This document shows positions 4,376 through 56,429 of a stretch of 64,000 nucleotides of DNA, one piece after another. Made by a program: the position numbers and the translations under genes. The DNA comes from Gracilinanus agilis. Taxonomy: Eukaryota. The stretch spans positions 3,961,688 to 4,025,687 of the forward strand of contig NC_058132.1 of the NCBI RefSeq assembly GCF_016433145.1, written 5' to 3'. Numbering within the stretch: the stretch's first letter is position 1; every line of letters starts with the position of its first letter. The notes below the pieces were generated by a model, which saw nothing but the letters and a program-made list of their open reading frames with translations, searched no databases and had not been told where the DNA came from.

Positions 4376-5617
4376 AGAGACATAGGAAGGAAGGGAGGGA
4401 GGGAGGGAGGGAAGAAGGAAGGAAGCCAGAAAAGGAGGAAGGAAAGGAGGGAAGGAGGAAGGGAGGGCGAGAGATGGATAAAAGAAAACAGGAGATGTGC
4501 AAGTAACAAGAGCTTAGCAGGAGAAAAGGGAAATTGGAAGAGTTGGGAGAGGGATATTGGAGACATATAAGACAAGAAGATGGCGGAGATGAAAGAGGGG
4601 CTAGGAAAAGTCAGGGGATGGCAAAGATGGAAGGGGGGATGGGGATAGGGGTGGTGGGAAGAATGGAGAGGAGAGATAGAAGGAAGTTAGGAGGAGGGAT
4701 GATAGGGAGATGGCCAACAAGTCGATGAGTATGAAGCGTAGACTGTGTCGGGGAGTCTGCTAGTGCTAAGGACGATGCAAAGGAAGTCAAAAGGTAGCCT
4801 CTGGCAAGGAGTTTGGTCACAGAAACGACATGCAAAGCACCATGCCCAAACCAGGCACGTGTGAGATAACTTACAGCTCATCCGCGGAGAGAAGACCTTA
4901 GTAGAAAGGGGGCTGGAGACTTCTCCCAGAAGGTGGGGTTTAGCTGAGATTGGAAGGAAGTCAGGGAAGGGAGGAGGCAGAGATGAGGAGGGAGAGCACT
5001 GAGGAGGGGGATGGCCAGAGAAAATGCATGGAGCATCATCTTCAAGGAACAGCAAGAAAGGCGATGTCACTGGATTGCATATGGTAGAGGAGAAATAGAA
5101 GAATGAGCGAAAGACAGTAGCGAGAGCTTGACCAGAGAAGAGAGAAGGAGGACTTAGTAGAGAGAGAAATGATTGAAGGAACAGGGAGGGAGGTCAAGGC
5201 CACAACAGAAAGGAGAACAAGAGGTGGGAGGATTGAGGAAGAAGAGGGATGAGAGGAGAAGGCAGCACTGGAGGAGGCACTGGAGAAGGTAGGGAAGGAT
5301 AATGAGTTGGAAGGGACAAGAAGGGCGAAGAGTACTAGGGGAAGCCAGGGTAGTGGGCGGAAGACGGGGAAATAAAGGAGAGGAGTGAGAGCAGAAGGGG
5401 GCATTTAGGGAGAGGGGTGGTTGGAGAATGGGGGTGATGTGGAAGGGGCTGAAGAAAGGGAGAAGAGAGACCTGGGAAGAGCTTGAGGGTGCTCCTAGAG
5501 GACCACGTCTCATTAGCAAAGTTTTGGGGAGCAGGACAGAGCTAGGCTTGCTGCCATGATTGTTCTTACCTGGCCCCTGGGGTCACCTCCTCTCTTCTCT
5601 GTCCCCATCTGGGCCAG

Positions 5618-9399: not shown

Positions 9400-10269
9400 G
9401 TAACAGGGGCTGGGGAGGCGGGATGGGGTTGGTTGGCACGTCGGGGTGGGGGAATCATCTCCCAAGTATTTTTGGAGTGCCTACTATGCGCAAGGGCCCC
9501 GAGGATGCAGATAAGCAAGCATGGCCCCCACTTCGGGAACTTTCGTCTAGCTGGGGAGACAGGACATGCATGTAAAATGATACAAACACACAGAAGATTG
9601 AATGGCATCTGGAACCAAAGCTATTGGGAACCTGCCCTTAAGGGATCAGACAGGTCCTAAGGAGTTTTACCCGAGGGGGAAATAGAGGTTAAAGGACTTG
9701 CCCAAGGGCACACCGCAGGGCTTTTAAGTGCAGGCAGTGGGGCTGCCCAGGCAGGGCTCTGGGGTCTGAAGGGAATGGAATCTTGGATGTGTCACTGCCA
9801 CGGGAAGGTGGCTAGTGCTCACCAACCAAGGGCAGCAGAGATCTGGCAGGCTCTGGCTAGCTGGAGAGTCCAGGGACCAATCATAGGACTGTTATCTGAG
9901 AGCCAGACTGGCAGGGTGGAGGGCACCAACCGGATGTATATTGGTAGAGCCAGGCCCTACCTGGATGAGAGCATCCCTGATCTACTCGTTGGGCAGAGGG
10001 AAGCGGTTCCTGCCCTCAGGGAGCTGCCAGGGCCTTCAGTGGGCTCCCTCTCCCACCAGCACAGATGTTCAGGAGAGATGCCAGATGAATACAGATGTTG
10101 AAACAAATAACCACAATAACTGCTATCTGTAGCAGCTGTATGAGGTAGGGAGGGCCAAAGCCATCTCCCCATTTTACAGATGAGGAAACAGAGAAAGGAA
10201 CCGTCTTGGCCAAGTAATTGTCGGGGCTTCCCTGCTCCCATACAGCCCTCTTTCTGTGATGCCACAGTT

Positions 10270-15540: not shown

Positions 15541-15616
15541 AAAGTCGAAGTGACAAAGCCAAAAGGCTCTTCCGACACTACACCGTGGGCTCTTACGACA
15601 GCTTTGATGCCCCCAG
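15541..15616 (+). CDS. SHANK1: SHANK1 exon: ESRSDKAKRLFRHYTVGSYDSFDAP(S)
   Basis: catccag|AA ... CCC AG|gtaagg; 76 nt phase 1/2. Confidence 0.97.
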
Positions 15617-17280
15617 GTAAGGAGTCTCCTCATCACCCCCTGCTTTTGTCCTCCCTAACTTTCCAATACCTTTGGATTCCCCTTCTCCAACCCATTCTTA
15701 AATTGGTCCATCTGAAAGGTCTATTTGAGGTCATCTAGTCCTAGCTCCTCATTTTGTAGAGGAGAAAATGGAGAAGGCGAGTGACTTGTCTAAGATCACA
15801 CGGCCAGCAGAACTAGAAGCAGGATCAGAGTTCAAACTGGAGCCTCTGGTCTTGGTCCAGCAGACTATCTACCATCCCCATGCCCACCCCCCACCCTCTG
15901 AATACAAACACTTTTCCTTCTCCAAAGGGAGTCTGGACTCTGGGACACAAATAGATCCCCACTCCCTACGCCTCTCTGTGTTTATAGAGTCCAGAGTCTG
16001 GGGGCAGGGAAGAACAAGGAGCATGTCCCATCTCTCCAGTGCTTCTCTCCCAGACTTCCATGGCCTAGGGCTGGGGCTGGGGCCAGGAGGAGCTGGGAGA
16101 ATCCCCCCAGGAAAGGGACCGCTGCTGGCCTATGTCCTTCTGAACCAATCTTTGCCAGGGGTTGGACTTGGTTTGGGGGGAGTCTGGAGGGGGAAGGACC
16201 CCTGTGGGCATAGATGTCGGTGCCCGTGCCCCTGCTCCCAAGGCTCTGGACCTGTGTGCTTCTGGGAATATATAAGTAGGAGCGTGTTTCTGGAATATGG
16301 GTTTTCCAATGGGCGTGCTCGCCCATTCATGCCATGACCAGGAAGCACCTACTATGTGCTAAGCATTCGAAGAACCCCTTGCGTGCCTTGGTGATCAGTC
16401 TATGTGTTGGGGGCATGCTTGGGCCCCAGGGGGAGGGAGCGTGCCGTGTGAATAGTACTGTGTTTTGGAGCACATGTATGTGTAGGACCCTGAGGATGGG
16501 CAGGGGCTTTTCCCTGAGTGTGTGCCCACGTGTCCTTGGGTCTTGGTGTGTAAGTGATCTTGCTCATGTGTGTTTCCTCCTTGGGTTTCTGCTGATGACC
16601 TTCCAAATCCATGTTTTTCCTCCAAGTACGTCCATGTGTTGGCCCACGTCCGTGTGTTTCCATAAGCGTGTTCCTGAATGTCTCTCAGTACAGCCATGTG
16701 TGCCCCTGTGAGTGGCTCTACTGTGTTTGCAGGGTGCGTGTTGGCGAGTGCACGGCCACTTTCTGGGTGCTTTCTGCGAGTGTTGGGCTCTCTCCATGCC
16801 CAGCTCTTCCTGTGTATCTTTGCCCCTCACTCTGGGCATCTATAATCCGGCCTTTGTCTGGGGGCGGGAGGGGGAAGCTCTGCAGGGGGAGAAGGAGGCC
16901 CAGCTTGGTGCCTTAGGTCAAACCCAAGAAGGTCCTGCCTCGCTGGTGGTGTTCCATTAAATGTGTCCCAAACCTGTGTGTCTGTGTTCTGGCCATGGAA
17001 AAAGGGTTAAGGGTGGTGGGAAGGTGGGAAGGAGCTGTGGGGGGCATTTGGACCCATGCCCTCCCCCTGGGATGGCTTCTCTCTGGCCCCAGGCGATTTG
17101 CCTCTCGCCTCTTGGGCTCCCCGCCTTCCTCCTTTTTTCGTGGCTCCCTTCTTCCTCTCCCCTCGTTTCCTGCCCCCTCTTCTGGGCCTCTTGCTGGGTT
17201 TCCTTTCAGGCCCCCCCCACCCCGTCCCTTTCTTCCTGGCCTCCCTCCTCTCCCTCCCCACATTGTGTGCTTCCCCCTTC

Positions 17281-17533
17281 GCGAGCACCTGAGGGCGAGT
17301 GTGTGGCCCTCGCCCCTCCCCCTCCAGCCAGGGGCGGCCAAGCCGGGGTGGGAGCCGCGGGAGGCTCTGCGATCCCGTGCTGGGAGCCTGGCATGCTCTG
17401 TCCGTCCTGTTTGTGCAGTGTGGCTTGTTTTGTGCTCTGTGTGTGATGTTGTGTGTTCCTCTCGCCTCTCTCAGTCTGCACCTGCGCGGGAGGGCTCTGG
17501 AGGGAGGAGGAGTGGAGGGGGGGACCCAGACCG
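17281..17533 (+). promoter_or_regulatory. CpG-rich candidate intragenic SHANK1 promoter or 5' UTR
   Basis: CpG-dense unique sequence directly upstream of the gap and the candidate alternative first exon. Confidence 0.45.
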
Positions 17534-17747
17534 NNNNNNNNNNNNNNNNNNNNNNNNNNNNNNNNNNNNNNNNNNNNNNNNNNNNNNNNNNNNNNNNNNN
17601 NNNNNNNNNNNNNNNNNNNNNNNNNNNNNNNNNNNNNNNNNNNNNNNNNNNNNNNNNNNNNNNNNNNNNNNNNNNNNNNNNNNNNNNNNNNNNNNNNNNN
17701 NNNNNNNNNNNNNNNNNNNNNNNNNNNNNNNNNNNNNNNNNNNNNNN
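17534..17747. other. Assembly gap (214 N), probably containing the alternative exon start codon
   Basis: N run between GC-rich flanks. Confidence 0.99.
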
Positions 17748-17836
17748 GGGGGGGGCCCCCTGCCGCAGCCGCCCCCCCTGTCCTCCAGCTGGCCGGCCCT
17801 GGGGCCCCGGCGGCGCAGCGTCTGGTATATCTACAG
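17748..17836 (+). CDS. SHANK1: Candidate SHANK1 alternative first exon (5' part in N gap): ...GGGPLPQPPPLSSSWPALGPRRRSVWYIY(S)
   Basis: Strong donor CAG|gtaatg at 17837 in phase 2, matching the phase-2 acceptor of the first PDZ exon (25107); CpG-rich upstream sequence. Confidence 0.65.
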
Positions 17837-20800
17837 GTAATGGAGCCCCCAAACGCCCCCCTTCCCCCTCCTCCCATTGGATGGATCCCTTTCCCAGGCT
17901 CTCTTTTTCCAGTCCCTCCTGGGCCACAGCCCCCTCACCTTCCCTCTCCCAAGACCCCTTCTTCATTTCCTCTCCCTGCCTCAACACTTTCACCGGATCC
18001 TGCCCTTACCCCACCGCCCCTTTCTTATTGCCCACCTTTCCAAGCCATCTCCTCCCTCCGTGGTGGCTCCAGAACCCCTCCCCCAACTTCAGGGACACTC
18101 TCTCCAGTCCTTTCACTCTGGGCCCCTACCCTTTCCTCTCCACCTCTCCAATCCCACGTCCTTCCTTGACTCTCCAGGCCCCTAGGAACCGTCACTCTCC
18201 ACACATCCCTTTCCCCAGCCCACCCCCACCCTCTCCTTAGCTTCCCCCATCAAAAGGACCCATTCCATGGAGACCCTGTTGGGTTTCTCCTTCCCTCCCA
18301 GGGTCTAACCCCTAGCCTTTACCATCTCCCCAGCTCCGGTGGGACCCATTTCAGAAGCTTCCCTCTTTCCCTGTCTCTCCCCAGGCCTTCTCCTTGCCTT
18401 TTCCTTTCTCTACAGTTCTCTGCCAAGACCCCTTTCCCCAACTCCCTCCTGAGCCCTTTCCCTGCCTCTCTCCCCCCAGCACCCAGTGTCTTCTTAACCC
18501 TCACTTCGCCTTTCTTGCAGACCCTTTCCCACAGTCCTCACCTTCCCAGCTCTGTTCTCTTTGATTCCTCTCTTCCTCCACAAATTGACTGGAGTCCCAA
18601 ACTCCCCTGTCTGCTCTCCTCTGGCACCCCTCTCTATCACTCAGCCTCCCAACTCTTTCTTCCCACCTCCAATTGAACCCCCATACACATGCTCCTCTGG
18701 TCTTCCATCCCTCTGTTCTCCCATTTCCCCATTCACCCCTCCCAGCAAACCCCTCCACCCCATTCATCCCCCTCTCTCCATTCACAGTCATTCACCGCCC
18801 CCCCATCATACACACACCCCGCCCCCTCTTTCCCTCCCCTCCCCTTTCCCTCACTGCATGTCACTGTGCGACTGTGTCAGAAGGGGAGAGAGAGAGGGAG
18901 GGAGGGAGGGAGGGGTGTGTGTGTGTGTGTAAAATGGTGGATTTGTGGCTGCTCCCAAGAGTCCTGTGTATGTGGGTCTCTGCCCGTATAGCCCCGTGTG
19001 ATGGCATATGTCTCAGCACTGTCATGCATGTCTAGGGAGACCATGTGTGTTAGTGTGTGGGCAGGGGGGAGTGTCTGGAGATTGTCTGTGCTTTGGTGTG
19101 CTTGTTCTCCAGCACTGGGGTCTCTGCTCTGTCAGTTTCTCCATGGCTCTTTTCAGTCTTCTGCCTCCATGTGCCTTTCTGAAGCAGCTCTATCCTTCTG
19201 TCTCCATGCGTGTGCTCCCATGTGTGCTGCAAACATTATGCATGTTTTCCCGTCGCTCTGTCTGTCCATAGCCATGCTTCCCCATGCTAGGAGCTAGCAC
19301 ACATGGGGATGGGTGGGGAGCACACAGGCCCCTGCATACAGAAGAGACCAGTGTGGGAGGGCCTTTGAATGAGTGTGAGTGAGTGTGTGTGTGTGTGTGT
19401 GTGTGCAGGCTGGGGGCGGGGTGGAGGGCCAGGGGAAGAAAGAGGTGCTGCATTCTCTGTGTGTGAGGCCCTGGGCCAGGCCCCAGTGCTGAGTGATCCT
19501 GCAGGGGTCCTGAGGGGAGGGAAGGCATGCCAGATGTGCCCACATGAATGGGGTGCTGGGAAGGGCAGATGAGGGCTGCAGACAGGAGAGACTGAAGAGG
19601 AATAAGTAAGAAGGCATCCAGGCAGGGGGGTGGAGAGGCATGCAGGACGCAGTCGGAGAGAAGGACGGCAAGGGTGAAGGCAGGATGGGATGTTTCCAGA
19701 GTATTGGAAGGTGTGGAGGAGACAGCCGAGAGGAGGGAAATCTGGGTAATGAGAGGACAATCGGAGTGAGGCTAGAGGGGATTGTGGGGAGGGAGGGGAG
19801 GGAGGGACGTGGAGAACGAGGACAGGAGAGATGAGAGGGGGAGCGGGGGAAAGAGGAGATGCTGGCAAACACGGGCATGTGGGCCACAGGAGGAGATTAG
19901 GGGAGGGACTGGAAGACTTGGGAGCAGGGTGGGGAGAAGACAGTTGGAATAAGGGCAGAAGGAGGCGCTACTAGGAATGTGGAGGGATGTTTGGGGGCTG
20001 TAGCTCGGATTTCATTGGTTTATAGAATTCCCTGGAAGGATCTCCCCCCGCCCCCCCCTTGGGGTGAGAAGAGGGATTTGAATGAAAGCAGATATAGGGA
20101 GGTGAGGATGGGAGCTTGTGACAAGAGGGATAGAGAAGCATTAGGAGGCACGGGGAGGTAGGAGTGGGCTATGTGGCTGCTCCTGGACACTGGGAGAACT
20201 GTAGAGAGTTGGGGGGAGGTGATTGAGAGACTCAAAGAGGACCCTGAGGGTGCCAGGGACCGAGGGCTTAGGGAAGAAAATACAGAGTCCAGACTTGGAA
20301 AAGATGCCTTGTCCAACTCCCTTATTTTAGAGGAGGGAGTCGGGCCCAGAGAGGTTAAGTCAGTGTGCCCAAGGTCACACAGGTAGAAAGGGACAGACCT
20401 TGGACACAAACGTGGCTCCTCTGACTCCAGAGCCAGAATGCTTTTCGCTGTGGCACTTCTCCTTCCTCTGCGGGACGGGGAGCAATGGAGCAATGGTCTG
20501 GAGCAGGCACGAGGGGTTATGGTGGCTGAACCCACTCTCCCTTCTTCCTCCTCCTCCCCCACCCAGAGCTCTCAGGGACCCTTCTTCCTCAGACCTTTCC
20601 CACGCGTGTGACTCCTGAATGAATGTTTGTCTCTTTTACCCTTCTTTTGGGCCCTGGAAGGAGCACTGAGGCTCCCACTGAGCCAGAGTGGGCTGGAAGG
20701 TGTCTGTGGGAGGGGGAAAGCCTGCTGGGCCAGTACGTGTGTGCGAGCCCAGGACGGAGCATGTTGCGCGAGAAGGCAAGGACGCGCGTCTGCTTGGGCT

Positions 20801-21689
20801 AGCGGGCTGCAGGGCGGGTGTCACGGGAGGGCAGCACAGGGGTCACAAGGCGTGTGGCCAGGCTGCGTGGGGTCCGCTGAGGCCGGATTGGAATGTGCCA
20901 CGTTGTGGTCAGAGGCCCTCCCGAAGGCCACGAGCACGCGTGTGGTTTAGGTGGGCACGATAGAGCGTACTGTAAGTAGTAAGTTAGGCGCAGGGCACCT
21001 TAGAGAGCGGCAGGCTGGCCACGAAGATGAAATGTCAGAGGCCAAGTCCAGCCCGCTGGGAAAGATGGCGGCATCCGGGGCCACGATGGGCACAGGGGCA
21101 CCGGGTTGGGCTTATGAGGGCGTGTTATGGCAGAACTGGAGAGGCCAGGCCCGGCCGAGCAGCAGTTCCCTCTGGGCCAGAGTGAACCAGGGGCCCTCCA
21201 GCATCTGGGTGAAGGGAGGAAGACCTCACTGCCTGCCAGGCAGCCTGTCCCACGGCTCTGCTTCGAATCGTTAGAAAGTTATCCTCTTTGCACCCTCTGC
21301 CCGTTCTCCTGACCTCGTCTGGACCCCTTTCCGACCCAGCGGCCCTCAGAGGCTCTCCTGCTCTGAGCCCAAAGCTCCTGGCCATCCTCGCTCTCCAAAG
21401 GGTGGGCCAGCAGAGCCGCCCAGGGAGGACAAGGCCTGCCCCCTTCCGGATTCTCCACATCCGGTTTTCTCTGAGGGAGCCCAAGGAAGGATGAGCTTGC
21501 GAGGCTGCCCGCTCGCACGGGTCGCTAGACTTGAGTTAACTCTGGCTGCTCTGCTAGTGGCTACTGCGGGCTCGGAGGGGGGCTGGGCACGGATAGGTGC
21601 CCCTAGAGGATGATGAAATAGGTACTGTCATTTGAGGGGTGGGCGGTTAGGAGGGGAATGACCCGGGAGCGTACCGTGGCGCGCAGCAG

Positions 21690-21866
21690 CTATCGTCCAG
21701 TTGCTTCAGTATTCTCCGGGTCTGTGACCCCATTTGGAGCTTTCTTGGCAAAGATAGAGGAGTGGTTGGCCATTTCCTTATTCAGCCCATTTTACAGATG
21801 AGGAAACTGAGGCCAAGAAGATAAAGTGACTCGCCCAGGGCCACCTAGATGGCACATGTCTGAGAT
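21690..21866 (-). mobile_element. MAR1-type SINE
   Basis: ttcttggcaaagatagaggagtggttggccatttcc plus gatgaggaaactgaggc. Confidence 0.8.
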
Positions 21867-22984
21867 CTCTCTATCCAAATACATGCCGGGATGCAGAGAT
21901 AGTGTGGAAGGATGCCGGAGCTTGGGTTCCGTGTCCCCGAATGGGGAGTGGAGATAGCGCCTGGCGTGTTCATGGTCTCTTCTGGATGGGTCGGGGGGCT
22001 AGACTGTCCCCCGCAGTGCCTGGGGAATATCTGGGCCTTGGGGTCTGCTCTCAATCAAATTCATTTTCGGTCCCTTCGGGACAGCGTTGGGTATTAGCGG
22101 GGAGCGGAGGGTGCTGGGGGCGGTAGAATGGAGATCAGAACTCCCGGAAGACAAGTTTGGCTTCGTGTGGGCTGTGGGCGTTCGGGCAATTGGAGCTGAC
22201 CCCAGAGTCGGGAAGAGCCCAATTCAAGTCCCGCCTCCAGCATATTCGATGTGTGACCCCACACGAGTGACTTCTACGCTCCCGGTCCGGAGGGGAACTC
22301 ACTAAGTCTTTGGCTTATGGAGGCATCGCTTTCTCCCTGGGTGAAGGGAGTTTCCACGAGGAGGAAATAACGGGCTTGGACCCCTCCCTCGCCCACTCCC
22401 CGTGCCTCAAATAGTACCTGTCACCGAGTAGGTGGTTAATACGTGGCTTTGGACCGTTTCCCCCGTCGGGAGCTCCCTCCCGCCTTCCCTCTGCCTCTTG
22501 GCATCCCTGCTCCCCGGCCCAAGCAGCTCGTGCGTCCTTGCCTCATCCAGACTCAGCCCTCCTCCCAGCGGCCCCTGAGACGCCTCGGTATTCACTTGAA
22601 ATCCACTCACTACATTGGCTTCTCGGGTCCTCCTTTGCTTGACCCCAGGAGAACCCAGCCGTCTCCTCGAGGTCTTTGAATCCCTGGTGCCCGGCACACG
22701 GTAGGCCCCTAAGGATGGAGTGGACTGCCTGGGGGGTGGTCATTTCCCAGCATCTTTGAGGTGTCCTGGCACATCCTAGGTTATGCCTGGAGGGTATTGG
22801 AGTATGTTAGGGTCAGGTGGCACAATGGAGTTGGAAGGACCTGGCTTCAAATCTGGCTTCAGACACTTCCTAGCTGTGTGACCCTGGGCAAGTCACTTCA
22901 CCCCCCACTGCCACTCTTCGCCTTAGGAGAGATGCTAAGACCGAATATACAGGTTTAGGTTGTGTTGGCACGCACTATAGTATA

Positions 22985-25106: not shown

Positions 25107-25189
25107 TGACTACATCATTAAGGAGAAGACCGTCCTGCTTCAGAAGAAGGACAGTGAAGGCTTCGGTTTTGTGCTCCGGGGAGCCAAGG
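25107..25189 (+). CDS. SHANK1: SHANK1 exon (PDZ start): DYIIKEKTVLLQKKDSEGFGFVLRGAK
   Basis: acacag|T GAC ... AAG G|gtgagt; 83 nt phase 2/1; GFGF PDZ loop. Confidence 0.98.
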
Positions 25190-25335: not shown

Positions 25336-25460
25336 CGCAGACCCCCATCGAGGAGTTCACTCCCACCCCAGCGTTCCCTGCGCTACAGTATCTCGAATCT
25401 GTGGATGAGGGTGGTGTTGCTTGGAGAGCAGGACTCCGAATGGGGGACTTCCTCATTGAG
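25336..25460 (+). CDS. SHANK1: SHANK1 exon (PDZ): AQTPIEEFTPTPAFPALQYLESVDEGGVAWRAGLRMGDFLIE
   Basis: cccgcag|CG ... GAG|gtgagc; 125 nt phase 1/0. Confidence 0.98.
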
Positions 25461-45959: not shown

Positions 45960-47700
45960 ATTCATTTATTCATTCGTTTATTTTTAATTTTATTTACTTT
46001 TTATTGTCATGCAAAAACCCACTTCCATATTGGTCACTGTTGTAAGAACACACCCATACACAACCAAGTAACACCAAAGATACACTGATGGGAAAGACGA
46101 CTGCAACAGCTCTTTCTCTAGAGGTGGATAGCATTCCCTGTCATAAGTCCCTCAGGATTGTCCCAGATCTTGGCATTGCTGAGAGTAGCCAAGTTCTCAC
46201 AGATAATCATTTAATATTACTGTTACTGAGAACGATGCTCTCTCTTAGTTCTGCTTATTTCGCTTTACCTCAGTTCCTGCAGATCTTTTCAGCTTTCTCT
46301 GAAATCATCTTGCTTATAATTCTCATAGCACAATAGTATTCCATCACCAACATGTACCACAATTTGTTCAACCATTCCTCAGTGGACGTCCATCCCCTCA
46401 ATTTCCAATTCTTTGCCCTTGCAAAAAGAGCTGCTAGAAATAGTTTTGTACGAGAAGGTTCTTTCCCTTTTTTTATTATCTCTTTGGGATACTGACCTAG
46501 TAGTGGTCTTACCTAATCAAAGGGTATGTACGGTTTTATAGTCCTTTGTGTATAGTTCCAAGTTGCCCTCCAGAATGATTGGATCCATTCACAACTCCAC
46601 CAACAATGTATTAGTGTCCCAATCTTGCCATATTCCCTCCAACATTTATCGCTTTCCATTAGTGTCATATTGTCCAACCTGTTAGGTGTGAGGTGTTTTA
46701 ATTTGCATTTCTCTAACCAAGAGTGATTTAGAACATTTTTTCATTGGATTATCGATGCTTTGATTTCTTCTTCTGAAAACTGCCTATTCATATATCCTTT
46801 GACCATTTGTCAATTGGGGAATGGCTTGTACTCTTATAAATTTGACTTAGTTCTTTATAAATTTGAGGAATTAGACCTTTATCAGAATTGTTATAAATTT
46901 CCCCCCCCCCCCCAGTTTGTTGTTTACCTTCTAATCTTGGCTGCATTTGTTTTGTTTGCACAAAAGCTTTTAAATTTAATATAAGCAAAATTACTCATTT
47001 TATATCTTGTAATGTTCTCTCTCTCTTGTCTGGTTATATATTCTTCCCTTCTACATAGAACTGTCAGGTAAACTGTTGTATATTCTCCCAATTTACTTAT
47101 GGTTTTCCTCTTCATAGCTAAATCACATACCCATTTGACCTTATCTTGGTACTGGGAGTGAGCTAGTGTTCTATACCTAGCTTCTGCCATAGTTTCCCAA
47201 TTTTCCCAGCACTTTTTTTTTTTACATAGTGAGTTTTTATCCCCAAAGCTGGGATCTTTGGATTTATCAAACACTAGTTTGCTGATGTCTTTTATCCTTA
47301 GTCTGTTCCATTGATCCACCCTTCTATTTCTTAGCCAGTTCCAGATTGCTTTGATAATTGTTCCTTTATGGTTCAAATTTAAGATCTGGTAATACTGGGC
47401 TAACATCCTTCACAGTTTTTTCAGTAGCTCCCTTGATATTGATCTTTTGTTCTTCCAGATGAACTTTGTTATTACTTTTTCTAGTTCTATAAAATCGGGT
47501 TTTGTTGGTTGTTTGGCTGGGATGGCATTGAATAAATTAATTTAGGCAAGATTGTCATTTTTATTAGATTAGCTCAGCCTACTCGTGAGCAATTAATGTT
47601 GTCCAATTGTTTAGATCTGACTTTGTGTTTTGTCATCGTGTTCATATGATGCCTGTGCTTGCTTTGGCAGGTAGATTCCCTTCATTATGGTTTAATTGTA
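45960..47700 (-). mobile_element. L1 ORF2 and 3' UTR
   Basis: Minus-strand peptides TIIKAIWNWLRNRRVDQWNR and DKGLIPQIYKELSQIYK. Confidence 0.92.
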
Positions 47701-49974: not shown

Positions 49975-50765
49975 TGGTTTTTTTTTTTAATTTAATAACA
50001 AATTTCCATGTAAGTTTTCCAAAGTTCTATCATCCAAACTGTCTCCCTTTTTCCTTCTCTCCCCACTCCCCGAGCTGTCAAGCAATGCCATCTGGGTTAT
50101 TATATATGTATTGTCATGCAAAACCTCTGACCAGATGATTCATTTTTATAAGTGAATAATCTTAGAAAAGCACAACCCCCAATCACATACCCGAAGAACC
50201 AAGTGATGAATCGTGGGTTGTTGTTTTTTCTGTGTTTCTACTCCCACAGTTTTTTCTCTTGGCATGGAGAGCATTCTTCCTCCTAAGTCCCTCAGAATGG
50301 TCCTGGATTGTCCTCTTAGTAGCAAAGTCTCTTACATTTGATCGTTCCACAATGTCTTGCTTTCTGTGTACAACGTTCTGGTTCTGCTTATGTCACTCTG
50401 AATCAGTTCATGGAGGTTTTTCCAGTCCATACAGAAATCGAGCGGCTCTTCATTCCTTACAGCACAATAATATTCCATCACCATCATAGACCACAATGTG
50501 CTCAGCCATTCCCCAATCGAGGGACAGCCCTTCCTTTGCCAGTTTTTTTCCACCACAAAAAGCGCGGCTATAAATATTTTTATGCAAGTCTGTTCATCTA
50601 TGATCTCTTTGGGGTACAAACCCAGCAGTGCTATGGCTGGGTCAAAGGGCAGGCAGTCTTTTAAAGCCCTTTGGGCAGAGTTCCAAATTGCCATCCAGAA
50701 TGGTTGGATCAGTTCACAAGTCCACCAGCAATGCATTAGTGTCCCAGTTTTGCCACATCCCCTGG
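49975..50765 (-). mobile_element. Relatively intact 5'-truncated L1 (ORF2 C-terminus and 3' UTR)
   Basis: Peptide RGCGKTGTLMHCWWTCELIQPFWMAIWN...FDPAIALLGLYPKEI...IFIAALFVV. Confidence 0.95.
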
Positions 50766-52436
50766 GGAAGAGCACTCTGTAAGGCTTAATGTGCAATAGA
50801 TGAGTTACTGCTGCCATGAAGAGCAGAAGGCTCTCCGGAGCCACCCTCATTTCCTTCCACCAATCCGTGTGGTCTGAAGCTCTCTGCCATCCGCCATGAT
50901 GGCTTCAGAGGGGCTCTGGTCTGGGCGAGGTATCTCTGGGCTCTTCCCATGAGCTTCTTTAGCCCACATCTCCCACTGAACTTGGGCCTTGCTCAGGTCT
51001 CCCCCATCTTGGACTTCAAAGGTTGGCTTCTGAGTGTGAGGATTGGCCTTCCCCTTGTTTCTCGCCATTAGAAGAGACTTTTTTGGCTTCAGCCCTTCCG
51101 GGCAGCCCGTTAAGCCCTTTTCCCATCTTCTCGGCCAGTCTTGTTGGCTCGCCCCGTCCCTTGTGGATCTGGAGGTCTGAGAAGGCTCCTGTCCCACCAA
51201 GGCCGGAACCCTGGGACGCTCCTCCAGACCCCAGTTCCAAGCTAGCACAGAACCATCAGTGGTGGCTCTAGAAGTCTCACCATTCGAGGCCTGAAATGAT
51301 GGACTCTTATTGTCATCGAAGCCACAAGACGGCCAGGAGACACTTCAGCAGACTCGACAGCCTCGACCCACGGTAGTCCTCCTGCCTTCTAGTTCACTAA
51401 TCCTGCCCAAAACAAGGAGCGCTTGGCACGGGCTGGCCCTTTGGTTGCCCTCTTTCATCCCTGCCTTTCGGTCTGTGGCTAACGGTCCCTCAGGAGGGGG
51501 GGAGGGGCCCCTTTCTCCTCCCCACCCCATCCGTGGGGAACCTTTCCTGGGACGAAGACAATAGCATGAATGTGTCTGATCCAGTCTGGATGGCAATCTG
51601 ACTGCTCAACTAGGGAAAAGTAGGACAAATTCACATTCCGTCCCTGCACCTTACAGCCTTTGTGACCTTGGACAGGTCACGTTTTCCCCTGGCCTCAGTT
51701 TCCCCATTTGTAAAGTGAGGATGTTGGCCTTGACTTCTGAGGTTCCTTCCAGCTCCACCATCCTCCTTGTTCCTCAGCTCTCCCTTTCCAGGGAAGACCT
51801 TCAGGCAGGCCGTGTCGTGTCTACACTTCCTCAAGATGGAAGAATGGGTTTGGAGTCCGTAGAGATCTGGGTTTGAACCAAAGTCTTGAAGCTCTCGGAA
51901 CTCGCTTAGCCTTTCTGCACCTCAGTCTTCTCATCTGTGAAATGACTCAATTCTCTCTTGGCTTCTCCCTGCCTCCTTGACCGTTGGGGGGGGGGTAAGA
52001 GCTATGACCCATAATCCCTCAGCAGAGCTGGTTCTGCCGGTTCTGGCCCCACAGAGGGCTGGCCAGGACACGTCTGGAGTGTCCCTCACCACTAGGCTAA
52101 AGGACTTCCCACTTGTAAACCTCCGGAGTCAGAGAGGACTGGCTGCGGGACCCTGGGAAAGTCTCCTGAGACTCCACTGCGTGCTGAGCTCCCCAACCAA
52201 AGTGCTCTGACAATAGGCACTGGCTGGGGGGGGGGGCTGCAAACCGCATTTCAGGGGAGCCTCGTGACACCCCTGGGAGGGGGATGCTTACAGAGGTCGT
52301 TGCCCTCATTTTACTGACGAGGAAACTGAGGCTGGGGGCACTCTAGAAATGGGGTCAGCAAGATACTTGCTGACCCCCCCACATAGCCACCTGGGAATCC
52401 AATTATTACCGCCCCCCACTTGGAAACAATCGGCTT

Positions 52437-52853: not shown

Positions 52854-53943
52854 GTAAGTGGTCCTGGGGCTGGGGGAGGCTGCCTGGACGGAGGGCTCGG
52901 CCTGCCTCCCCTCGTCTGTTCGGGGATTCAGTGTCTGCCTCCATTTACCCCTTCTGTAAAATGGGGGTGGCCGCCTCAGTGGGGCGCGGGCGGAGGCGGT
53001 TGGATCAAGCCTGAGATGTGGTAGAAAGGCTAGTCCCGCCCAGAACTGGGCCCAGACGCCCTCCTAGGAGGCTGCGTGGTTTAGCGGCCAGAGAGCTGGC
53101 CGGGGGCAAGTGCCAGGAGTGGGGAGAGTCCCGGCCACACGCGGACTCCGGAAGAGCCGAATTCGAATTCGGCCTCCCAACCATTCAAGCCTGGGCAGGG
53201 CACTTCCCTTTCCACGCTGGGCCAGCTAGCTGGCTGCCGGCGCCCCATCCCCTCCTGGGACTCTCCTCCGTGTTCTCGTCTGTACAGTGGCTCCTCGGAG
53301 CCCTCATCTCCTCGGGCTGTGTGCGGAAGGCGCTTGGCAAGCCTTTTAACACTCGTGAGGCACTGCCAGGGGGCCGCTCCTTTAAGCCCACTCTGAGATC
53401 CCAGAGCGCTTAGCCGGGAGGAGCCCACTGACTTGGGTGGAGGGAATTTCCTCCCTGGGACTTCCCCATCCCGCGGGCAAGTCTTTGAGCTGAAGGAAGG
53501 CTAGTTCCGGGCTGGCGCGGCGGAGAGGACGAGCCAAAGGCCCGAGGGCGGCTGCCCTAAAGGGACTACTTTCTCCTCATCTCCATATCCCGGAGGAGGC
53601 AAATAGCGACTTCCGAGGCTCGGTACTGGCCGGAGGCCTCAGCCCTGAGGCCGCTTTCCTGCCGCCAGCCGCCCCTAGTCTTAGTAGTGCAGCCCGCGGA
53701 AGGATGAGGTGGCTTCTCCAGGGAGGGGGGCTCGGCTGCTGCTTCTGGGGCTCTCCTGCCTCTGCCTCTTCCTCCTTCCTCCCCCGCCCCCCACCGATTC
53801 TGCTCCTTAGCGGGTGGCGTCCCAGGGCGGGCTCCCTGGGGATGGCTCCTCGGCCCGGCGCCTGAGGGAAGGGCATTCCCAGAGAGGGGCTGGTGGGAGG
53901 GGCCCCGGCCGGCCTAGCCGCCTGACTCGTGCCTCCCATTCAG

Positions 53944-54073
53944 GGGCAGCTGAGGACGAGCGGCCGTACCTGACGCCCCCGGCCATGAAGTTCAGCCGGA
54001 GCCTATCGGTGCCGGGCTCCGAAGACATCCCTCCCCCGCCCACAACGTCCCCGCCCGAGCCCCCCTATAGCAC
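53944..54073 (+). CDS. SHANK1: SHANK1 exon, truncated by gap: GAAEDERPYLTPPAMKFSRSLSVPGSEDIPPPPTTSPPEPPYS...
   Basis: cattcag|GG GCA; matches start of the proline-rich region; runs into N at 54074. Confidence 0.96.
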
Positions 54074-54573
54074 NNNNNNNNNNNNNNNNNNNNNNNNNNN
54101 NNNNNNNNNNNNNNNNNNNNNNNNNNNNNNNNNNNNNNNNNNNNNNNNNNNNNNNNNNNNNNNNNNNNNNNNNNNNNNNNNNNNNNNNNNNNNNNNNNNN
54201 NNNNNNNNNNNNNNNNNNNNNNNNNNNNNNNNNNNNNNNNNNNNNNNNNNNNNNNNNNNNNNNNNNNNNNNNNNNNNNNNNNNNNNNNNNNNNNNNNNNN
54301 NNNNNNNNNNNNNNNNNNNNNNNNNNNNNNNNNNNNNNNNNNNNNNNNNNNNNNNNNNNNNNNNNNNNNNNNNNNNNNNNNNNNNNNNNNNNNNNNNNNN
54401 NNNNNNNNNNNNNNNNNNNNNNNNNNNNNNNNNNNNNNNNNNNNNNNNNNNNNNNNNNNNNNNNNNNNNNNNNNNNNNNNNNNNNNNNNNNNNNNNNNNN
54501 NNNNNNNNNNNNNNNNNNNNNNNNNNNNNNNNNNNNNNNNNNNNNNNNNNNNNNNNNNNNNNNNNNNNNNNNN
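54074..54573. other. Assembly gap of exactly 500 N, likely an unsized scaffolding join
   Basis: Round length unlike the other gaps; cuts a SHANK1 exon. Confidence 0.97.

Positions 54574-55820: not shown

Positions 55821-56429
<609 letters not shown>

What the first reader, a model, noticed from the sequence alone, without database searches (positions are those of the whole stretch)
17281..17836. Internal first exon predicting a PDZ-initiated SHANK1 isoform (...PRRRSVWYIY|SDYIIKEK)
Seen: a CpG-rich stretch, a gap, then an open frame ending TAC AG|gtaatg in exactly the phase needed by the first PDZ exon at 25107, encoding GPLPQPPPLSSSWPALGPRRRSVWYIY. Known (recalled): the short SHANK2 isoform CortBP1 starts with a private exon ending ...PRNSLY|SDCII at the paralogous junction. 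Inference: an equivalent SHANK1 isoform lacking ankyrin and SH3 domains, with a PKA-type RRRS site and an aromatic patch just before the PDZ; the start codon is probably in the gap.
Basis: partly seen in the sequence, partly recalled or inferred. Interest (0 to 1): 0.8.

Follow-up and report, generated by a model that had tools for sequence, protein, structure and literature searches.

The report
Known short-isoform first exon of SHANK1

Summary
The sequence is as described. After the gap, 17748-17834 reads GGGPLPQPPPLSSSWPALGPRRRSVWYIY, then AG|gtaatg at 17836. That is the phase needed by the first PDZ exon at 25107.

The gene is SHANK1: its PDZ exons are identical to the rat Shank1 PDZ domain in the PDB. 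The exon lies in the 9.5-kb intron just upstream of the PDZ exons.

Public proteins start with this exon and join WYIY|SDYIIKEK: woodchuck, orangutan 'SHANK1 isoform 7', brushtail possum 'SHANK1-like', bamboo shark and teleosts. Across tetrapod sequences the last 19 codons show no amino-acid change against 2-9 synonymous changes. The GTA donor is invariant and similarity ends at the intron.

Papers already describe two SHANK1 promoters giving a long SHANK1A and a short SHANK1B, with an intragenic CpG island upstream of the short transcript.

The start codon is not visible. In woodchuck it lies 48 nt before the point matching 17748, so it would fall inside the gap. The gap flanks are collinear with woodchuck, but are 499 nt apart there against 214 N here. 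The pre-gap stretch is not coding.

Verdict: real, correctly interpreted, already known.

The parts
15541..15616 (+). Canonical SHANK1 exon just upstream (..ESRSDKAKRLFRHYTVGSYDSFDAP, donor AG|gtaagg, same phase). The short isoform skips it and all exons before it.
   Evidence: It aligns to woodchuck L005 7415-7505, next to an SH3-bearing gene model.
17440..17533 (+). Conserved non-coding block at the upstream edge of the gap. Probably promoter-proximal or 5'UTR sequence on the shore of the CpG island of the internal promoter.
   Evidence: 81% identical to woodchuck L005 9453-9549, which lies 452-548 nt upstream of the woodchuck ATG. Its words are held by only one run, of organism H. No match in L003 or L004.
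17534..17747 (.). Assembly gap (214 N, length only estimated). It was not filled. By analogy with relatives it hides the core of the CpG island, probably the transcription start, and the start codon.
   Evidence: In woodchuck the matching interval is 499 nt with GC 0.81-0.87 and CpG o/e 0.8-1.0, and it holds the ATG at 10001.
17748..17836 (+). Readable 3' end of the alternative first exon: 29 codons (GGGPLPQPPPLSSSWPALGPRRRSVWYIY) plus AG, the first two bases of the Ser codon completed at 25107.
   Evidence: 92.7% identical to woodchuck. Matches P0001, P0002, P0003 and P0005 at E 4e-8 to 8e-4. 0 non-synonymous against 2-9 synonymous differences among tetrapods. Alignment A3.
17837..17842 (+). 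5' splice site gtaatg.
   Evidence: GTA is invariant in all eight loci, and similarity stops right after it.
25107..25189 (+). First PDZ exon (S)DYIIKEKTVLLQKKDSEGFGFVLRGAK, with a pyrimidine-rich acceptor ..ccctttcccacacacag|. It is the splice partner of both the canonical exon and the alternative first exon.
   Evidence: 100% identical to the rat Shank1 PDZ domain in PDB 1q3o.

Best explanation
17748-17836 is the coding 3' end of the alternative first exon of the short SHANK1 isoform, called SHANK1B in reviews.

Proposed mechanism: a second promoter sits in a CpG island inside the 9.5-kb intron between the last SH3-linker exon (15541-15616) and the first PDZ exon (25107). It starts a transcript whose private first exon supplies a short 5'UTR, its own ATG and about 31-46 codons. 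Its donor (AG|gtaatg, 17836) splices in phase to the PDZ exon. The product is a SHANK1 that lacks the SPN, ankyrin-repeat and SH3 regions and begins with a private peptide ending ..SSSWPALGPRRRSVWYIY directly before the PDZ domain.

Shown here: gene identity, position, phase, orthology of the peptide to the N-termini of public short SHANK1 proteins, purifying selection on this frame, and conservation of the donor.

Inferred, not shown in this window: the start codon and transcription start (hidden in the gap), actual use of the 17836>25107 junction in this species, and promoter activity.
For: - SHANK1 identity: PDZ exons 100% identical to PDB Shank1 chains, E about 1e-42.
- Position: the exon lies 2.2 kb downstream of the canonical donor at 15616 and 7.3 kb upstream of 25107.
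- Frame and donor.
- A whole-library HMMER search with the 30-aa piece found four proteins that carry the peptide, plus one unrelated repeat protein (P0004). One hit is the woodchuck protein P0002, MALSAV...RRRSVWYIY|SDYIIKEK.
- Further proteins with the same junction: 'SHANK1 isoform 7 [Pongo abelii]', 'SHANK1-like [Trichosurus vulpecula]', eel, Coilia and bamboo shark.
- Selection: the 19 codons before the donor are identical in protein among the window, woodchuck, L004 and L003, with 2-9 synonymous differences. Teleosts differ at 3 residues, with pS 0.7-0.9 against pN 0.14-0.18.
- Conservation ends at the GTA donor.
- Each relative has an in-frame ATG with a purine at -3 and G at +4, 31-46 codons before the donor. 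An in-frame stop lies further upstream.
- In woodchuck a true CpG island (GC 0.81-0.87, o/e 0.8-1.0) covers exactly the interval that is gap in the window.
- In eel the exon lies 2.6 kb upstream of the PDZ exon.
- The exon's sampled words are held by runs of five coded organisms. One is labelled RNA, thirteen are guessed RNA and five are of unknown kind.
- Literature: SHANK1 has two promoters giving SHANK1A and the short SHANK1B, and an intragenic CpG island lies upstream of the short transcript ENST00000391813 (PMC6697638). 'Two isoforms generated by different promoters' (PMC9579136).
Against: - No start codon and no transcription start are visible in the window, because both would fall in the gap.
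- Most runs holding the exon words are only guessed to be RNA, and only 5 words were sampled.
- The readable flank is not a CpG island by the usual criteria (o/e 0.43-0.46).
- Several supporting proteins are automatic gene models. The eel model even has an artefactual 4-nt first exon.
- I could not read a paper that prints the N-terminal sequence of SHANK1B. Equating this exon with 'SHANK1B' therefore rests on its position and the domain description.
Confidence: 0.9

Rival explanations
1. The exon is real and coding, but it is an internal cassette exon included in long transcripts rather than a promoter-driven first exon.
For: The canonical donor at 15616 has the same phase (AG|), so splicing into this exon is arithmetically possible. 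The 5' boundary of the exon is hidden in the gap. The frame stays open 54-186 codons upstream of the donor in relatives.
Against: - All public models that contain it start in it with Met.
- A Kozak-type ATG is conserved from fish to mammals, and in-frame stops lie upstream of it.
- The region upstream in woodchuck is 83-87% GC CpG island, which is promoter-like and not a pyrimidine-rich acceptor.
- The literature speaks of a second promoter.
Confidence: 0.04
2. The stretch is a conserved non-coding element, such as CpG-island or enhancer sequence. Its open frame and GT are fortuitous, and the matching proteins are gene-prediction artefacts.
For: The sequence is GC-rich, where open frames are common. 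Several matching proteins are 'hypothetical' automatic models. No transcript evidence could be laid on the window.
Against: - Differences between species fall almost only on synonymous positions of this frame: 0 non-synonymous against 2-9 synonymous in tetrapods.
- Conservation stops exactly at the donor.
- The ATG context is conserved.
- Independent annotations in five lineages use the same junction.
- A short SHANK1 transcript is described in papers.
Confidence: 0.03
3. The exon is orthologous to the known one but is disabled in this species: the start codon is lost, or there is a frameshift in the unread part.
For: The start codon and about 16 or more codons are unread. The window differs from placentals by a one-residue deletion (PPP-LSSSW).
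Against: The readable 29 codons are intact. They are 97% identical to the possum protein, which shares the same one-residue state. The donor is intact.
Confidence: 0.03

Closest known systems
SHANK1 short isoform from the second promoter (SHANK1B of reviews; human transcript ENST00000391813 as cited in PMC6697638; 'SHANK1 isoform 7' of orangutan, P0007)
   Same: Same gene and same intron. Same private N-terminal peptide (97% identical over the readable part to possum P0008 and woodchuck P0002, 93% to orangutan P0007). Same WYIY|SDYIIKEK junction. A CpG island lies upstream in the relative.
   Different: Nothing of substance. In this window the 5' part, including the ATG, is an assembly gap. 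The species copy has PPPLSSSW (as in possum) instead of PPPALSSSW.
[quoted passage not shown]
   Same: A private first exon is spliced at the paralogous Ser codon directly before the PDZ. Sheep P0128 reads MLTGYNNGRCPRNSLY|SDCVIEEK. It is loosely similar in its ending (PRN.S..Y against the fish SHANK1 PRNRSVWFIY).
   Different: It is a different gene. The peptides are too short and too different to prove common descent. The SSSWP.LGP motif and the W.IY run are absent.
SHANK3 intragenic promoters and N-terminally truncated isoforms (six promoters; PMC9579136)
   Same: The same logic applies: internal promoters in CpG-rich introns give isoforms without ANK or SH3. A private exon is joined at the same junction: MVLKSNPGIILLCSFLP|SDYIIEEK in birds, tuatara and paddlefish.
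   Different: The private peptide is unrelated. SHANK3 has more promoters.

Membership tests
Alternative first exon of the short (PDZ-initiated) SHANK1 isoform | Lies in SHANK1, in the intron directly upstream of the first PDZ exon | tested here: met
   PDZ exons are identical to Shank1 PDB chains. The canonical exon ends at 15616 and the PDZ exon starts at 25107.
Alternative first exon of the short (PDZ-initiated) SHANK1 isoform | Donor in the phase required by the PDZ exon | tested here: met
   AG|gtaatg at 17836 plus T at 25107 gives Ser, and the frame continues DYIIKEK.
Alternative first exon of the short (PDZ-initiated) SHANK1 isoform | Encoded peptide orthologous to the N-terminus of short SHANK1 proteins of other species | tested here: met
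   93-97% identity to the possum, woodchuck and orangutan proteins that carry the junction.
Alternative first exon of the short (PDZ-initiated) SHANK1 isoform | Own in-frame start codon | not testable with these tools
   It is hidden in gap 17534-17747, which was not to be filled. Relatives have a Kozak-type ATG 31-46 codons before the donor.
Alternative first exon of the short (PDZ-initiated) SHANK1 isoform | Transcripts that start here and use the 17836>25107 junction in this species | not testable with these tools
There is only indirect support: the exon's words are held by runs of five organisms, one labelled RNA, thirteen guessed RNA and five of unknown kind.
CpG-island promoter | At least 200 nt with GC > 0.55 and CpG observed/expected > 0.6 | tested here: inconclusive
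   The readable flanks have o/e 0.43-0.46 and the core is unread. The orthologous woodchuck interval meets the criteria (GC 0.81-0.87, o/e 0.8-1.0).
Basophilic (PKA-type R-R-x-S) phosphorylation site | Arg at -3 and -2 of a Ser; phosphorylation shown | tested here: inconclusive
   The RRRS motif is present and identical in tetrapods and shark. Teleosts have RNRS, so only the -3 and -1 Arg are kept. No phosphorylation data were examined.

The most novel reading that the evidence does not exclude
The private peptide may be more than a leader. It replaces the exon 15541-15616 (..KRLFRHYTVGSYDSF..), which in Shank3 forms the betaN hairpin that gives tight, specific binding of the extended SAPAP/GKAP tail (PMC6337207). 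The ancient ..GPRRRS(V/I)W(Y/F)IY segment is 16 of 18 residues identical between shark and mammals. It could form a substitute strand next to the PDZ, with a conserved basophilic Ser as a switch. The short isoform would then have a different, regulatable affinity for SAPAP. All three SHANK paralogues have a private exon at this same junction, so this could be a family-wide way of tuning the PDZ.
Probability: 0.15. Interest if true: 0.45.

Novelty: already known. Interest (0 to 1): 0.1.

Why it matters
As a discovery it matters little. SHANK1's second promoter and its PDZ-first isoform are textbook items for this autism-linked scaffold family, and the exact junction is already in public protein records.

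The check is still useful in three ways:
- It shows that the assembly gap hides the start codon and the CpG-island core, so any annotation of this species will miss or truncate the short isoform.
- It documents that the private peptide is under strong purifying selection back to cartilaginous fish, although its function has not been studied as far as I could find.

Tried and rejected
- The pre-gap stretch 17281-17533 as part of the coding exon: rejected. In woodchuck its match lies more than 450 nt upstream of the ATG with an in-frame stop between. Its words are held by one run only. It has no similarity to L003 or L004.
- The ORFs through the gap listed are artefacts of the N run.
- My first thought that the gene was SHANK3 was rejected by the PDB search.
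- A search for the small SLIDGIDSG-type micro-exon in the intron found nothing.
- AlphaFold2 of the private N-terminus plus PDZ, with a 33-row alignment, gave mean pLDDT 48.9. This is unusable, and no fold search was run.
- The bacterial-type promoter and terminator scan is irrelevant here and found nothing.
- Pfam found nothing on the EMC10-like ORF or on the start of the large SHANK1 exon.
- Jiang & Ehlers 2013 and Hung 2008 are not held by the paper library, so I could not read a primary description of the SHANK1B N-terminus.
- The possum locus could not be fetched as DNA.

Full report
**Observation.** The window has an assembly gap at 17534-17747 (214 N). Directly after it, 17748-17834 is open in one frame and reads GGGPLPQPPPLSSSWPALGPRRRSVWYIY. 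It is followed by AG at 17835-17836 and gtaatg. The exon at 25107 begins T GAC TAC ATC ATT AAG after a pyrimidine-rich acceptor. The join therefore gives AG|T = Ser and ...WYIY-S-DYIIKEK. The sequence facts in the finding are correct.

The 'CpG-rich stretch' before the gap is GC-rich (0.61-0.71). Its CpG observed/expected is only 0.43-0.46.

**Gene and position.** The two PDZ exons (25107-25189 and 25336-25460) are 100% identical to the Shank1 PDZ chains of the PDB (1q3o and others, E about 1e-42). Shank3 chains score lower. Motif mapping places ankyrin-repeat exons at 0.1-5.7 kb and the SH3 exon at 15.25-15.37 kb. The exon ..ESRSDKAKRLFRHYTVGSYDSFDAP lies at 15541-15616, with donor AG|gtaagg in the same phase. 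The candidate therefore sits in the 9.5-kb intron directly upstream of the first PDZ exon, where an internal first exon for a PDZ-first isoform would be expected.

**The gap.** The scan's program asked for this to be tested first. I aligned the two flanks to a relative, the woodchuck locus L005 fetched through protein P0002.
- The flanks are collinear and in the same orientation: 17440-17533 matches 9453-9549 (81%) and 17748-17840 matches 10049-10144 (92.7%).
- The interval between them is 499 nt in woodchuck against 214 N here. The stated gap length cannot be trusted, and a reading frame across it has no meaning.
- The 281-aa ORF 16995..17840 is an artefact.
- In woodchuck the match of the pre-gap block lies 452-548 nt upstream of the ATG, and an in-frame stop lies between them. 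The pre-gap stretch is therefore not coding. At most it is promoter or 5'UTR sequence.
- The woodchuck interval that corresponds to the gap is a full CpG island (GC 0.81-0.87, o/e 0.8-1.0). This also explains why it failed to assemble here.

**Is the frame real?** A HMMER search of 1.84 billion representative proteins with the 30-residue piece returned five hits. Four carry the peptide:
- P0002, a woodchuck protein, reads MALSAVGGG...LPQPPPALSSSWPALGPRRRSVWYIY|SDYIIKEKTVLL... and continues through the whole PDZ domain.
- P0001, P0003 and P0005 are ORFs called on unspliced contigs that end ...WYIYR or ...WFIYR at the donor.

A word-indexed search added three more:
- 'SHANK1 isoform 7 [Pongo abelii]'.
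[quoted passage not shown] This is the closest to the window and shares its PPPLSSSW state.
- An eel model.

A further search added Coilia and the bamboo shark, MDLGNGGMHSQFSSSWPVLGPRRRSIWYIY|SDYIIKEK. Alignment A3 shows the core SSSWP.LGPR.RS.W.IY kept from shark to mammals.

**Selection and splice site.** I compared DNA of the 19 codons before the donor in the window, woodchuck, two Logan contigs, a TARA contig and the eel genome.
- The four tetrapod sequences encode the same 19 residues while differing at 2-9 synonymous positions.
- Tetrapod-teleost pairs have pS 0.66-0.89 against pN 0.14-0.18.
- The GTA of the donor is invariant, and similarity collapses immediately after it.
- In the eel genome the exon lies 2.6 kb upstream of the SDYIIKEK exon.
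- Every relative has an in-frame ATG 31-46 codons before the donor, with a purine at -3 and G at +4. An in-frame stop lies further upstream.

This is the signature of a translated first exon, not of a chance frame in GC-rich DNA.

**Expression.** The five sampled words of the 89-nt piece are held (share 0.8-1.0) by runs of five coded organisms. One run is explicitly labelled as RNA-Seq cDNA. Thirteen are only guessed to be RNA and five are of unknown kind. The pre-gap stretch is held by a single run of another organism code, probably the window's own species. I therefore have no junction reads for this species, which is the main unfilled hole.

**What is known.**
[quoted passage not shown] It also says an intragenic CpG island lies upstream of the shorter transcript ENST00000391813.
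- PMC6060255 says all three SHANK genes use internal promoters.

SHANK3 has its own private exon at the same junction, MVLKSNPGIILLCSFLP|SDYIIEEK, in birds, tuatara and paddlefish.

**Mechanism.**
- Shown: an ancient, selected, coding exon end with a conserved donor, in phase with the PDZ exon, in the correct intron of SHANK1.
- Inferred: a CpG-island promoter and the ATG lie in the unread gap. Transcripts from it skip the SPN, ankyrin and SH3 exons, giving a PDZ/proline-rich/SAM scaffold with a private leader of about 40 residues.
- A further, untested idea: the private exon replaces exon 15541-15616, whose Shank3 counterpart (KRLFRHYT...) forms the betaN hairpin needed for tight binding of the extended SAPAP tail (PMC6337207). 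The short isoform may therefore bind SAPAP/GKAP differently. An AlphaFold2 attempt on the private N-terminus plus PDZ was too poor to use (mean pLDDT 48.9).

**Verdict.** The feature is already known. Interest is low, apart from the unexplored function of a peptide conserved for more than 400 million years (a dating from general knowledge of the shark-mammal split, not computed here).

Noticed in passing
window 53814-54073 (+), gap 54074-54573, and 56124-56225 (-): SHANK1's large exon starts near 53.8 kb (..AMKFSRSLSVPGSEDIPPPPTTSPPEPPYS) and is cut by a 500-N gap. About 2 kb later the minus strand encodes a stretch matching EMC10 residues 194-227 (PDB 6ww7_I, E 6.5e-13). The rest of SHANK1 (proline-rich exon, SAM) is not in the window. 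Either sequence is missing or the scaffold is joined wrongly at that gap.
   Followed up: partly
proteins P0128, P0069, P0088, P0094, P0095, P0099: All three SHANK paralogues have a private first exon spliced at the same Ser codon just before the PDZ. SHANK2 ends ..GRCPRNSLY| and SHANK3 ends ..LLCSFLP|, in lineages from fish to mammals or birds. Whether the three are homologous is open.
   Followed up: partly
window 20600-22600: A second, weaker CpG-rich stretch lies in the same intron (CpG o/e 0.5-0.8, GC 0.53-0.65). Its meaning is unknown.
   Followed up: no
window 16952-17023 and 18758-18876: Non-coding blocks conserved with woodchuck (84% and 79%) flank the alternative first exon. They are candidate regulatory elements of the internal promoter.
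   Followed up: no
L007 3001-3004: The eel gene model P0009 starts with an artefactual 4-nt exon (ATGG|gt). The real exon, with its own MAMGGCGE start, lies at about 4799-4905. This is a caution about the automatic models used as support.
   Followed up: yes
window 19373-19405: (GT)16 microsatellite in the intron.
   Followed up: no
window 46924-47406 (-) and 50332-50850 (-): ORFs that look like fragments of LINE-1 ORF2, judged from memory of such sequences and not tested.
   Followed up: no
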